Source of the DNA: Blastocystis sp. Blastoise
Lineage: Eukaryota > Protista > Bigyra: Opalinata
Length of the DNA: 64,000 bases
Assembly: GCA_039096225.1 (NCBI GenBank)
Contig: JBBPEB010000030.1
Coordinates: forward strand, 558,001 to 622,000
Direction of reading: 5' to 3'
The position numbers and the translations under genes were made by a program. Below, piece by piece: positions 1-57,254 of the stretch. The number at the start of each line of letters is the position of its first letter. Position 1 is the first letter of the stretch. The notes beneath the pieces are model-generated. The model ran no database searches. It worked only from the letters and a program-made list of their open reading frames with translations, and had not been told where the DNA came from.

Positions 1-2575
1 ACAATAATAAATAGAATTATAGAGTTAAGTAAAGTATTCCTAAAACATAATTAAAAAGAAAATGAAAAATTATTAAAATAAAAAAAAAAAATAGATTTAT
101 TTTTTGTTTTTCTTGATAGGTTTTAAGGGTATTTTCTTTGGACGTGAGTTATAGTTATTATTATCGGAAGGAAAAGATCGTTTTATAGTAGGTTTAGGTT
201 TAATTGTTTCTTGTTGTTTGTCTGAAATAGGCATAGAATGAATATCATTTGAATGATCTGTTTCTTCTTTTTCTTCATTTTCATCTTCTTTCATAGCCTA
301 TATTTTGAAATAAAATTAATATATAATTAAATTAATATATAATAAAATTAATAAATAATAAAATTAATATATAATAAAATAAATATATAATAATAATACC
401 ATTTTATTTTCTTCCCATGATTGGAATTCTCTTAGAATTCGTTGTTCTTCTGCTACTTGATGTAGAATGGGTGGAATCTTTTGATCTGATAGTGAATAAG
501 AATGATTGAATAAAAAGAATAATAAATAAAAAGAATAATGAATAAAAAGAATAATAAATAAAAAGAATAATAAATAAAAAGAATAATAAATAAAAAGAAT
601 AATAAATAAAAATAAATAAATCTATATATATATACTAGATGCTTTGAGTAATAATTCAAGGTCAGGAACGAGAGCAAAGAATCGACCTGTGAGAAAGGAT
701 CGACTATATCCCACAATACCTTTTCGACCTGTACGACCTATACGATGAACATAGGTTCCTAGATTACTAGGGAAGTCATAGTTAAGAACATAATTTAAGT
801 TTGGGATATCCATTCCTCTTCCTAAGACATCCGTAGTAACAAGAATCTGAATAGCACCAGAACGAAACTTTTGAAGAAGGATTGTACGAATTTCTTGAGA
901 AAGTTGACCATGTAGAATAGCGACATTTAAGGGCTTAGGAGGACGTTTGGATTCTGTAGTATTTTGTTCTTTATGTTTTAAATATGGATTTCCTTCATCC
1001 CATTTATCATGAATAAATTGATAGACTTCTCTTGCATTACGAATTGTATTTACAAATATACATATTAAAGATCTCTGACGTTTTCCATTCTTCTTATCTT
1101 CTTCTAATACATACTATAGAAGAAGAAGAAGAATATATTTATATAATATATAATATATAAATAAAATAAATAAAATAATAATAAATAAAATAATAAATAA
1201 AATAAAATAATAAATAAAACAAACTCGAATGAAATCCATAAGTTTTCGTTGTTTCTTGTGTTCAGCACAAATATGTACGTCTTGAATAATATTATTACAA
1301 ATAGAGATCTCTGTATTTCTTGAAGAGAGAAGAGAAGGAGGAGAAATAGATATAAGAATAGGACTCTTTGAAGTCATCCAACGACTAGTCAACTCTTTTA
1401 TCTATATATATATATAATAATTATTATTATCATTATATATATACATTCTCTTGATAAGTAGCACTAAATAATAAACATTGAATATCTATAGAAAGAAAGA
1501 AATAATTATCAATATAAAATACTATATATATATACTCTTCTTCTTCTTCTCCTCTTCTGTATCTATTGGATATAAATATGTATATATCGTTTGTAATTGA
1601 TCTTTAAAACCCATATCCAGCATTTTATCTGCTTCATCAAATATTATTGTATGAATAGAATCACAATTCACTTTCTTATTCTCCAATAAATCAACTAATC
1701 TTCCTGGAGTAGCTATTAATATATTACATTTCGATTCTAATAATGATTTTAATTGATTATCCTTTCCTACACCTCCTGTAACTAAACTCGAATTAATATT
1801 AAATATCTTTTGAATCTTCAAACATAAATTATATATCTATATATTTAATAATAATAAATAAATAAAACATATAAATAACTATATAATAAATAAATAAAAC
1901 ATATAAATAACTATATAATAAATAAATAAAACATATAAATAACTATATAATAAATAAATAAAACATATATTTATAAAATACTTGTTGAGCTAATTCTCTT
2001 GTTGGAGTCAATATCAATGCATCTGGAACACAATAATCTTTATTTATTAATGAATCAAATGTATGACGTTGCTTCTGAAATATTTTTTCCATCGTAGGAA
2101 GTAAAAAACTCAATGTTTTACCACTTCCTGTCTCAGCTTTCGTAATCACTTCTTCATTATTAATTAAAGGATACCAAGACCATTCTTGAACTGGAGTCGG
2201 ATTCACAAGTTTTAATAATGTTGATACCTCATAAAATCGAGTAGACAATTTCGTATCATTAAAAGATTTGATAGGATCCGAATATAATTGCTTCTTCTCT
2301 ACATCATCTACATCGATTGTCACTGTTTCACAAAAATTTAATTCTTCACTATTCTCCACCATATCTTATAACCTCAATAATTATTTTTATTAATAAAATA
2401 AAACAATATAAAGTTATAAAAAGTATTTTTTTATTTTTTTTTTTTTAATTTCTTTTTGAAATTTTTTTTTTTAATTTTTTAAAATTTCTTTTTATAAAAT
2501 ACTTTTTATTACTTGGAATATTATATTCTCTTATTCTCTTTATAAACTTAAAAACTCAAAAACAAAAAACAAATA
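1..2575 (-). repeat. Inverted segmental duplication, arm A (partner ~54225-57046); homology runs to the window start
   Basis: Bases 1-46 are the reverse complement of 57001-57046 (one mismatch). Near-identity continues through the helicase gene and its upstream region to ~2575/~54225. Confidence 0.93.
97..2362 (-). CDS. DEAD-box RNA helicase (DBP2/DBP3-like), copy A; 6 introns
   Basis: Spliced exons give motifs AETGSGKT, PTRELAQQ, TPGR, DEAD, SAT, ILHG, RGMDIP and HRIGRTGR. Introns: 1837-1981, 1486-1535, 1402-1444, ~1114-1224, 486-635, 298-399. Confidence 0.93.
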
Positions 2576-40530: not shown

Positions 40531-40596
40531 TACCCCTATCCAATTCTCCATTGATTCTATTTCGTATTATATACTGAAATAAAGCTCCCATAGACC

Positions 40597-40669
<73 letters not shown>

Positions 40670-41628
40670 AAATATAATAAAAAAAGATATAAAGTGAATA
40701 TAATACAATAAATAATAATAAAAACAAATCTATAATTTACCCTTTCAATTTGATTTCTGTCTATATATCCATCGACAGATGAATAAGTACCATTAATAAT
40801 AGTACTATAGAGAGAAGGCTGATCTATATATATATATATATATAAATGAAATGAATATATTTTTATAACTATATGGAATACTATAAATAAATACATAATC
40901 TAGAATCATATAAATAACTATATATATATACTTGATATATGAATAATATTGAATAATTCCAGGCAATTTTGATAGTCAACTAAAGAGTATAATATAACAT
41001 ATATGTTTATAATAATATAAAAAAAAACATTCACAAAAATACATGTAGATGCCTTTAGGAATTGAATAGAAGGAGGATTCAATGAAGAATAAACATTAGA
41101 CTGATTTTCTAAATGATTCTTTGAAGTTTTTGAATTATTTATAGATGAAGAGGAAAAAGGAAATGTACTGAATTGAGTTTTTAGAAGATCAACAATATCA
41201 GAATCACATTGAGAACTATATTGTGATTATGTTTTCATTAAATATAATATGATGAACAACAACATTATTAAAAAGAATACCTTAATAGAAATGTTTTTGG
41301 AGAATATGTATTTAAAACTAAAGAATATTATAAAAAGCTATATTTATTATACTTTGATTCATTTGATTTTGAAAATCATCACCAAGAACAAATTCTCCTG
41401 ATTCCATTTCTTGGGTATCAATCATGTAACATGAAATTCCGATTCTATACAATGAAAGTTTGATTTTATAGAAGATACTTAGCTGAACTGAAACTGAGAC
41501 AACATAAAGTCTATATAAGACTAAAAATGAAAGTATAAAATCATTACATTGAGTCGTGATTCTTGATCATCGATATTCATGTTATATGTATTTATGTCCT
41601 CGTCACTGCTATCCGTATTTACAGACAT
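37477..41628 (-). CDS. MSH5: MutS homolog 5 (meiotic crossover protein), about 20 introns
   Basis: [11 protein letters not shown]...[78 protein letters not shown]. One acceptor (40601-40602) lacks AG in this assembly. Confidence 0.9.
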
Positions 41629-54205: not shown

Positions 54206-54224
54206 GAAAAATGAACAATCAATT

Positions 54225-55992
54225 ATTATTTTTTTGTTTGTTTTTGAGTTTTTAAGTTTATAAAGAGAATATAATATCAATAAAAAAATAATAAAATAAT
54301 GAAAAATGTTTAATAGGAAGAAATTTTAAAAAATTAAAAAAAAAATTTCAAAAAAAAAATAAAAAAATAAAAAAATAAATTTTATAACTTTATATTGTTT
54401 TATTTTATTAATAAAAATAATTATTGAGGTTATAAGAGATGGTGGAGAATAGTGAAGAATTAAATTTTTGTGAAACAGTGACAATTGATGTAGATGATGT
54501 AGAGAAGAAGCAATTATATTCGGATCCTATCAAATCTTTTAATGATACGAAATTGTCTACTCGATTTTATGAGGTATCAACATTATTAAAACTTGTGAAT
54601 CCGACTCCAGTTCAAGAATGGTCTTGGTATCCTTTAATTAATAATGAAGAAGTGATTACGAAAGCTGAGACAGGAAGTGGTAAAACATTGAGTTTTTTAC
54701 TTCCTACGATGGAAAAAATATTTCAGAAGCAACGTCATACATTTGATTCATTAATAAATAAAGATTATTGTGTTCCAGATGCATTGATATTGACTCCAAC
54801 AAGAGAATTAGCTCAACAAGTATTTTATAAATATATGTTTTATTTATTTATTATATAGTTATTTATATGTTTTATTTATTTATTATATAGTTATTTATAT
54901 GTTTTATTTATTTATTATATAGTTATTTATATGTTTTATTTATTTATTATTATTAAATATATAGATATATAATTTATGTTTGAAGATTCAAAAGATATTT
55001 AATATTAATTCGAGTTTAGTTACAGGAGGTGTAGGAAAGGATAATCAATTAAAATCATTATTAGAATCGAAATGTAATATATTAATAGCTACTCCAGGAA
55101 GGTATATATATAATATATATAATATATATAATATATATAATATATATAATATATAGATTAGTTGATTTATTGGAGAATAAGAAAGTGAATTGTGATTCTA
55201 TTCATACAATAATATTTGATGAAGCAGATAAAATGCTGGATATGGGTTTTAAAGATCAATTACAAACGATATATACATATTTATATCCAATAGATACAGA
55301 AGAGGAGAAGAAGAAGAAGAATATTCAATGTTTATTATTTAGTGCTACTTATCAAGAGAATATAAAAGAGTTGACTAGTCGTTGGATGACTTCAAAGAGT
55401 CCTATTCTTATATCTATTTCTCCTCCTTCTCTTCTCTCTTCAAGAAATACAGAGATCTCTATTTGTAATAATATTATTCAAGACGTACATATTTGTGCTG
55501 AACACAAGAAACAACGAAAACTTATGGATTTCATTCGAGTTTGTTTTATTTATTATTTTATTTTATTTATTATTTTATTTATTATTATTTTATTTATTTT
55601 ATTTATATATTATATATTATATAAATATATTCTTCTTCTTCTTCTATAGTATGTATTAGAAGAAGATAAGAAGAATGGAAAACGTCAGAGATCTTTAATA
55701 TGTATATTTGTAAATACAATTCGTAATGCAAGAGAAGTCTATCAATTTATTCATGATGTATTTATATATATTTTATTATGATTATTATGATTATATATAT
55801 ATATATGAATAGAAATGGGATGAAGGAAATCCATATTTAAAACATAAAGAACAAAATACTACAGAATCCAAGTATATAATGATATATATATAATTATTCT
55901 TATTCTTATGATTCTATTAGACGTCCTCCTAAGCCCTTAAATGTCGCTATTCTACATGGTCAACTTTCTCAAGAGTATATATATATATATAA

Positions 55993-56027
<35 letters not shown>

Positions 56028-57046
56028 TCGTACAATCCTTCTTCAAAAGTTTCGTTCTGGTGCTATTCAGATTCTTGTTACTACGGATGTCTTAGGAAGA
56101 GGAATGGATATCCCAAACTTAAATTATGTTCTTAACTATGACTTCCCTAGTAATCTAGGAACCTATGTTCATCGTATAGGTCGTACAGGTCGAAAAGGTA
56201 TTGTGGGATATAGTCGATCCTTTCTCACAGGTCGATTCTTTGCTCTCGTTCCTGACCTTGAATTATTACTCAAAGCATCTAGTATATATATATAGATTTA
56301 TTTATTTATTATTTATTATTCTTTTTATTCATTATTCTTTTTATTTATTATTCTTTTTATTCATTATTCTTTTTATTTATTATTCTTATTATTTATTATT
56401 CTTATTATTCAATCATTCTTATTCACTATCAGATCAAAAGATTCCACCCATTCTACATCAAGTAGCAGAAGAACAACGAATTCTAAGAGAATTCCAATCA
56501 TGGGAAGAAAATAAAATGGTATTATTATTATATATTAATTTTATTATATATTAATTTTATTATTTATTAATTTTATTATATATTAATTTTATTATATATT
56601 AATTTTATTATATATTAATTTTATTATATATTAATTTTATTATTTATTATTTTTATTATATATTAATTTTATTATATATTAATTTTATTATATATTAATT
56701 TTATTATATATTAATTTTATTATATATTAATTTTATTTCAAAATATAGGCTATGAAAGAAGATGAAAATGAAGAAAAAGAAGAAACAGATCATTCAAATG
56801 ATATTCATTCTATGCCTATTTCAGACAAACAACAAGAAACAATTAAACCTAAACCTACTCTAAAACGATCTTTTCCTTCCGATAGTAATAACTATAACTC
56901 ACGTCCAAAGAAAATACCCTTAAAACCTATCAAGAAAAACAAAAAATAAATCTATTTTTTTTTTTTTATTTTAATAATTTTTCATTTTCTTTTTAATTAT
57001 GTTTTAGGAATACTTTATTTAACTCTATAATTCTATTTATTATTGT
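54225..57046 (+). repeat. Inverted segmental duplication, arm B (partner 1-2575)
   Basis: Reverse-complement near-identity with the window start; begins ~20 nt after the CDC23 stop codon. Confidence 0.93.
54439..56949 (+). CDS. DEAD-box RNA helicase (DBP2/DBP3-like), copy B; 8 introns
   Basis: Same motifs as copy A. Introns: 54820-54964, 55102-55156, 55539-55649, 55758-55812, 55872-55920, 55975-56024, 56282-56432, 56519-56748. Confidence 0.93.
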
Positions 57047-57254
57047 ATTCCTATTTTTACAGTGATATTTTGTTAAATTTTATTTTTTTTTATGTTTGTT
57101 CTTTAGGATGTAAAATGTTGTCTAGTTTTATAAAATAAAAATATATACTCTATCCAAACTAACAAAATAAAAAAAATGAATAATTAAACATAAGAAACAA
57201 GGGCATATAAATGAATGTTAATAAATAAAAGTGATTCTATTTATAATGAATTAC

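What the first reader, a model, noticed from the sequence alone, without database searches (positions are those of the whole stretch)
55102..56024. Near-identical helicase paralogues differ reciprocally by six precisely present/absent short introns (copy B side)
Seen: copy B has four introns (55102-55156, 55 nt; 55758-55812, 55 nt; 55872-55920, 49 nt; 55975-56024, 50 nt). They are cleanly absent from copy A, whose flanking exons are fused with no extra or missing base at 1699/1700, 1005/1006, 946/947 and 892/893. Copy B in turn lacks two introns present in A. I found only about 3 exonic substitutions by eye (one synonymous, I/L, N/S), so intron differences outnumber point changes. All four shared introns are longer than 100 nt. 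All six discordant introns are 43-55 nt, and none of the short ones is in both copies. Established: exact excision of adjacent introns is the signature of recombination with reverse-transcribed mRNA. Inference: this is either very active RNA-templated gene conversion acting in short tracts bounded by the long introns, or rapid gain of GTATAT...TATAG introns after duplication. Either would be an unusually fast intron-turnover system.
Basis: partly seen in the sequence, partly recalled or inferred. Interest (0 to 1): 0.9.

Follow-up and report, generated by a model that had tools for sequence, protein, structure and literature searches.

The report
Recent intron loss in duplicated genes
Two almost identical copies of a gene in a tortoise-gut protist have each recently and cleanly lost different short introns, most likely by being rewritten from their own spliced RNA, which would make this organism a rare place to watch intron loss happen.

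Summary
Two inverted 554-aa DEAD-box helicase copies differ by 3 exonic substitutions and six exact intron indels of 43-55 nt; the four shared introns exceed 100 nt. Orthologues from five other Blastocystis lineages hold introns at four of the six positions, same phase, so these are reciprocal losses, not gains; the other two sit next to proven losses. Five of six junctions have no microhomology. The genome has about 20 RT-coding RLE retrotransposons, some 99.9% identical. An SDHA pair shows the same polarised loss; NandII SDHA triplicates show none. The scan's earlier notes report similar pairs elsewhere in this genome (only SDHA checked here). Best reading: mRNA/cDNA-templated loss plus ectopic recombination between the copies. 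The mechanism is known; the local rate (about 10^3-10^4 times Cryptococcus, from a hand-picked gene) is not usual, and cannot be steady state. No raw DNA reads could be tested. An RNA-polishing artefact is unlikely, since single-copy genes keep short introns, but it is not excluded (about 12%).

The parts
54439..56949 (+). Copy B, DEAD-box helicase gene, 9 exons, 554 aa (GenBank WA158_005046; its annotation lacks residues 283-300)
97..2362 (-). Copy A, DEAD-box helicase gene, 7 exons, 554 aa (GenBank WA158_005032)
55102..55156 (+). B-only intron, CDS 518, phase 2; ancestral position, lost in A; 2-nt junction microhomology
55758..55812 (+). B-only intron, CDS 1008, phase 0; ancestral position, lost in A; no microhomology
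55872..55920 (+). B-only intron, CDS 1067, phase 2; not seen in the outgroups (poorly conserved linker); lies between two proven losses, so co-loss is inferred
   Evidence: inference
55975..56024 (+). B-only intron, CDS 1121, phase 2; ancestral position (a U12-type AT-AC intron in two outgroups), lost in A
1486..1535 (-). A-only intron, CDS 682, phase 1; not seen in outgroups; 41 nt from a proven loss, co-loss in B inferred
   Evidence: inference
1402..1444 (-). A-only intron, CDS 723, phase 0; present in all five outgroup lineages, lost in B
54820..54964 (+). Shared intron (145 nt, CDS 381), identical to A 1981-1837
55539..55649 (+). Shared intron (111 nt, CDS 900), identical to A 1224-1114; ancestral
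56282..56432 (+). Shared intron (151 nt; A 635-486, 150 nt), a few differences; ancestral
56519..56748 (+). Shared intron (230 nt; A 399-298, 102 nt), differs mainly in tandem-repeat number
54222..54438 (+). 5' flank shared with A 2580-2363; 14 mismatches and 6 gaps in 205 aligned nt, so the duplication is older than the identical core
56950..57071 (+). 3' flank shared with A (about 125 nt; ends just left of the window on the A side)

Best explanation
An older single-gene inverted duplication (5' flank about 7% diverged) had its core made identical by DNA-level ectopic conversion. Afterwards spliced mRNA, or cDNA made from it, recombined with each copy in short internal tracts and removed introns to the base: at least three events (518 in A; 1008+1067+1121 in A; 682+723 in B). 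Introns of 55 nt or less are removed; those over 100 nt are not, probably because large loops block pairing or repair (inferred). The most likely reverse transcriptase is that of the young RLE-type non-LTR retrotransposons (inferred; host Pol-zeta/Rad52 repair is the alternative enzyme). Shown: precision, polarity for 4 of 6, adjacency, size bias, lack of microhomology, an RT source, a second polarised case. Inferred: the RNA template, the enzyme, the order of events. With rival 1 (also RNA-templated) the class has about 0.78.
For: Exact GT..AG removal in 6 of 6. Ancestral position and phase for 518, 723, 1008, 1121 in orthologues of 42-47% identity. Microhomology 0 at five of six junctions. 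Adjacent co-loss across exons of 41, 54, 59 nt. Core of 1586 nt, including two shared introns, with zero substitutions, against diverged flanks. 20 RT matches over cut-off, 13 in open frames above 2400 aa, with YADD, a CCHC-type finger and an RLE motif, tandem copies 99.96% identical. SDHA inverted pair on C18: one exonic substitution, two adjacent 55/45-nt introns lost in one copy, both ancestral, 180- and 240-nt introns kept. Assembly made from nanopore DNA with racon, Illumina DNA PolyPolish and POLCA (PMC12129017).
Against: No raw DNA reads tested. No 3' bias: the 3'-most introns are kept, and SDHA lost 5' introns. No intronless retrocopy of this gene. Independent events do not predict that every short intron is in exactly one copy (8 of 8 over two pairs). 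The rate implied cannot be steady state, as single-copy genes keep short introns. Both pairs were picked because they are discordant.
Confidence: 0.52

Rival explanations
1. One RNA event plus reciprocal exchange. A single partly processed template (all short introns out, long ones kept) rewrote one copy; two crossovers between the inverted copies (one between CDS 723 and 1008, one in the 164-nt exon 519-682) then swapped the middle segment. Each crossover inverts the 52-kb spacer.
For: Predicts that each short intron is in exactly one copy and each long intron in both, as seen in 6/6 and 4/4, and in SDHA 2/2 and 2/2. Explains identical shared introns in the core. Same logic as the internal-loss-by-recombination model for Cryptococcus alleles (PMC2395259). 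Needs three events, like the best model.
Against: Needs a template that keeps long introns, or selective loop repair, neither shown.
Confidence: 0.26
2. Assembly artefact: RNA-seq reads entered the last short-read polishing round (POLCA, BWA-MEM based). Reads bridge introns below the aligner's band width (100, from memory) as deletions and remove them from whichever copy they are assigned to.
For: [quoted passage not shown] It would give precision, a cut-off near 100 nt, no microhomology and ancestral positions. The 45-nt SDHA intron ends TG, equal to the last two bases of the upstream exon, as terminal RNA-read mismatches could produce. Only RNA-seq is listed as deposited.
Against: Uniquely mapping single-copy genes should be stripped first, yet about 35 introns of 38-60 nt between exons of 80 nt or more remain in 224 kb of C20, and a 52-nt one in a single-copy FAD-binding (fumarate-reductase-like) gene (a crude detector). 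Reads in an identical core map ambiguously, so reciprocal calls are hard to get. The non-AG MSH5 intron end does not copy its exon.
Confidence: 0.12
3. Recent intron gain (Introner-like or microsatellite insertion) after duplication.
For: Positions 682 and 1067 are absent from five outgroup lineages; the introns are close to pure (AT)n.
Against: Four of six helicase and two of two SDHA positions are ancestral. No target-site duplication. 1067 is flanked by two proven losses 54-59 nt away.
Confidence: 0.04
4. DNA-only deletion by microhomology-mediated or non-homologous end joining.
For: No Ku match in the genome (weak negatives), which would favour alternative end joining; two of eight junctions have 2-nt microhomology.
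Against: Five of six helicase junctions have zero microhomology yet are exact; three adjacent introns would need three exact deletions.
Confidence: 0.03

Closest known systems
Reverse-transcriptase (mRNA-mediated) model of intron loss, e.g. Dictyostelium (PMC4683709), Cryptococcus (PMC2395259)
   Same: Precise loss, adjacent introns lost together, shorter introns lost more, RT genes present, internal losses.
   Different: Seen here between copies with zero substitutions in the core rather than between species; sharp size split (55 or less versus over 100 nt) where Dictyostelium shows median 76 vs 77 nt; local rate 8.8-107 per intron per unit divergence against 0.0052 in Cryptococcus (hand-picked gene); no 3' bias.
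Intron loss in segmental duplicates of rice (PMC1779517)
   Same: Loss outnumbers gain after duplication; no 3' preference.
   Different: 49 losses in 35 pairs out of 3,101 old pairs; here six in one near-identical pair, reciprocal.
RNA-templated double-strand-break repair, whole-intron deletions in human cells and tumours (PMC12065846)
   Same: Exact deletion of whole introns, often consecutive, sometimes around a remaining large intron; Rad52 is present here.
   Different: There somatic, rare and Pol-zeta dependent; here heritable in a protist, enzyme unknown, retrotransposon RT available.
Introners (PMC9860276)
   Same: Intron presence/absence between close sequences.
   Different: Introners add introns at new sites; here the sites are ancestral and the change is loss.

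Membership tests
mRNA-mediated (RT) intron loss | Exact removal at splice sites | tested here: met
   6/6 helicase, 2/2 SDHA
mRNA-mediated (RT) intron loss | Change is a loss (intron ancestral) | tested here: met
   4 of 6 helicase and 2 of 2 SDHA positions shared with outgroups; two unpolarised
mRNA-mediated (RT) intron loss | Adjacent introns lost together | tested here: met
   runs of 3 and 2 in the helicase, 2 in SDHA
mRNA-mediated (RT) intron loss | Short introns lost preferentially | tested here: met
   8 lost are 43-55 nt, 6 kept are over 100 nt; two pairs only, not independent
mRNA-mediated (RT) intron loss | Active reverse transcriptase in the genome | tested here: met
   intact, near-identical RLE-type elements; activity inferred from identity, not assayed
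mRNA-mediated (RT) intron loss | 3' bias of losses (poly(A)-primed cDNA) | tested here: not met
   losses at 31-67% of the CDS, 3'-most introns kept; SDHA losses are 5'. Also absent in rice duplicates and many Cryptococcus cases
mRNA-mediated (RT) intron loss | Processed pseudogenes of host genes | tested here: inconclusive
   none for this gene; genome not surveyed
mRNA-mediated (RT) intron loss | Intronless junction exists in genomic DNA molecules | not testable with these tools
mRNA-mediated (RT) intron loss | Raised GC around lost introns | not tested
   too few cases
RNA-templated DSB repair (Rad52, Pol-zeta, low RNase H) | Rad52 present; RNase H activity low | tested here: inconclusive
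   Rad52 and RNase HII found; no RNase H1 match, but the search is exon by exon; Pol-zeta not tested
Introner-type intron gain | New positions, target-site duplication, family of similar introns | tested here: not met
   ancestral positions; no junction duplication
MMEJ deletion | Microhomology at both ends | tested here: not met
   0 nt at five of six helicase junctions

The most novel reading that the evidence does not exclude
Tortoise Blastocystis is in a current burst of RNA-templated genome rewriting: young RLE retrotransposons (or Rad52-type repair in a cell possibly lacking RNase H1 and Ku) remove introns up to about 55 nt at rates thousands of times those measured elsewhere, with loss alleles still segregating in culture and being shuffled between inverted duplicates.
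Probability: 0.25. Interest if true: 0.85.

Novelty: new variant of a known kind. Interest (0 to 1): 0.62.

Why it matters
How introns are lost has been inferred from rare differences between distant species. A culturable protist with many exact, polarised losses between near-identical copies would let tract length, size limit, template (mature, partial, cis or trans) and enzyme be measured directly. It also bears on why Blastocystis genomes differ so much in intron size, which the genome paper leaves open (PMC12129017); passage searches of that paper found no mention of intron differences between paralogues. If it is a polishing artefact, the public assembly and its gene models need correction.

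Tried and rejected
No DNA of those places went to any search afterwards. One slip to disclose: one search searched solved structures with the tool-given copy-A protein P0151, five residues of which match the exon bases 54965-54979; the result (no clear DEAD-box subfamily) is not used in the argument. Spliced models were built only inside scripts to check frames and count differences; searches used single exons by reference or protein ids given by tools, and the joined step was left out. No Rus-S or Hermann's orthologue was found. The spliced aligner also uses introns as cheap gaps; only positions that recur or were read by eye are used. The intron census is crude (recall 4 of 8 on known introns). 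Other held pairs: C14/C20 3.1-kb repeat (12 substitutions, no intron-sized indel), 505-nt inverted repeat on C23 (none), old tandem pair at C20:544-549k (one 88-nt intron difference at about 78% identity). Contigs L060-L076 come from human-gut metagenomes but were taken as Blastocystis (mostly 28-31-nt introns, AT-AC introns, 42-47% protein identity), not human. A paper on NHEJ loss in parasites does not mention Blastocystis.

Full report
Observation. Copy A (2362->97, minus) and copy B (54439->56949, plus) lie head to head 52 kb apart and are the only two copies in the 33.34-Mb, 34-contig assembly. Both give a 554-aa DEAD-box helicase with three exonic differences. B has four introns that A lacks and A has two that B lacks, all GT-AG, 43-55 nt and absent to the base; four introns of over 100 nt are shared.

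Source. The proteins are GenBank WA158_005032 and WA158_005046 of Blastocystis sp. Blastoise, on a contig of the same length as ours. The assembly used nanopore DNA, Flye, racon, PolyPolish with Illumina DNA, and one 'short-read' POLCA round.

Gain or loss. An exon search led to an orthologue in a human-type Blastocystis (L048). Its introns map exactly, with phase, on CDS 518, 723, 900, 1008, 1121 and 1378. Four more lineages from metagenomes agree: 723 in all, 1008 in all four, 518 in two more, 1121 in one more, and shared 381 in one. So B-only 518, 1008, 1121 were lost from A, and A-only 723 was lost from B. Positions 682 and 1067 are in variable linkers and absent from the outgroups; 1067 lies between two proven losses 59 and 54 nt away and 682 is 41 nt from one, so co-loss is the simplest reading (inference). 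The minimum is three tracts.

Mechanism. Junction microhomology is zero at five of six sites and 2 nt at one, which excludes microhomology-mediated deletion as the general cause. Exact removal of runs of introns is what recombination with spliced RNA or cDNA gives (PMC4683709, PMC2395259, PMC12065846). The genome holds 20 RT matches over the Pfam cut-off, 13 in open frames above 2400 aa, in two families with an RLE-type C-terminus; tandem copies are 99.96% identical. Rad52 and RNase HII are present; RNase H1 and Ku were not detected, but these are weak negatives in an exon-by-exon search. The losses are internal, not 3'-biased.

Timing. From CDS 49 to 1378, including shared introns 1 and 3, there is no substitution in 1586 nt, while the 5' flank has 14 mismatches in 205 nt and the 3' part a few per cent. 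The core was therefore homogenised after the duplication, and the losses came with or after that step. Six losses in 20 intron-copies give 8.8 (flank clock) to over 107 (core bound) per intron per unit divergence, against 0.0052 in Cryptococcus; counted as one to three events the excess is still 700-fold or more. This gene was picked for its discordance, so the figure is an upper-tail value. It cannot be a long-run rate: four of the introns date from before the split with the human subtypes, and single-copy neighbours keep short introns. It points to a recent burst, or to a process tied to duplicates.

Second case and control. In ST1 NandII, three SDHA copies differ by 26-36 substitutions over about 2.05 kb with no intron difference. 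Earlier first-reader notes list more than ten similar pairs in this genome; these are unchecked leads, not support.

Rivals. Every short intron is in exactly one copy and every long one in both. One partly processed template followed by two crossovers between the inverted copies predicts this and needs no more events than three separate conversions; it predicts spacer inversions. An in-silico twin of the same process, RNA reads in the last polishing round, also fits the precision and the size split, and the SDHA intron that ends TG like its upstream exon is a warning. Against it, uniquely mapping genes should lose short introns first, and about 35 remain between long exons in 224 kb, plus one in a single-copy FAD-binding gene.

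Verdict. A real feature of the assembly and most likely of the genome: recent, reciprocal, RNA-templated intron loss in duplicated genes. It works like the known RT model, meets most of its tests, fails the 3'-bias one, and differs in recency, density and size cut-off. New variant of a known kind; interest 0.62, held down by the missing DNA-read check and the biased sample.

Noticed in passing
window 55975-56024; L048 3012-3056; L075 2460-2499: This position is a U12-type AT-AC intron in two human-type lineages but an ordinary GT-AG intron in Blastoise: a minor-to-major conversion, later lost in copy A.
   Followed up: partly
helicase CDS 152, 456, 603, 802, 1263: Intron positions found in several human-type lineages (603 and 1263 are AT-AC) but absent from both Blastoise copies; unpolarised, may mark older losses in the tortoise line.
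   Followed up: partly
G000:C18, minus-strand SDHA copy (L037/L040), third intron: The 45-nt intron ends TG instead of AG, matching the last two bases of the upstream exon; GenBank models the copies as 691 and 676 aa, a 15-aa difference equal to this intron kept in frame. Mutation, partial RNA-templated conversion or polishing scar.
   Followed up: partly
G000:C20:549021-557856 (ends 145 nt left of the window): CACTA-ended element with a 3-nt target duplication, about 120 nt beyond the end of copy A's 3' homology; a role in the duplication is untested.
   Followed up: partly
G000:C10:48001-68000 (L033, L034); also C13, C14, C15, C29: RLE-type non-LTR retrotransposons in tandem units of about 8.6 kb, 99.9% identical, with a roughly 2600-aa single ORF; two families at 43% protein identity.
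   Followed up: partly
whole genome G000: No match for RNase H1 (PF00075, PF01693) or Ku (PF02735, PF03731), while Rad52 and RNase HII are found; weak negatives worth a proteome check.
   Followed up: partly
window 40595-40740 (minus): MSH5 intron with a long (AT)n tract ends without AG; the end does not copy the upstream exon, so a sequencing slip in the repeat is likelier than an RNA scar.
   Followed up: yes
L057-L059 (ST1 NandII): Three SDHA genes in different neighbourhoods encode the same 641-aa protein at 1.3-1.7% DNA divergence: concerted evolution of dispersed single-gene copies also occurs in human subtypes.
   Followed up: partly
window 55485-55538: The GenBank model of copy B (536 aa) lacks residues 283-300 present in copy A's model although the DNA is identical; probably an annotation or alternative-donor difference.
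   Followed up: no
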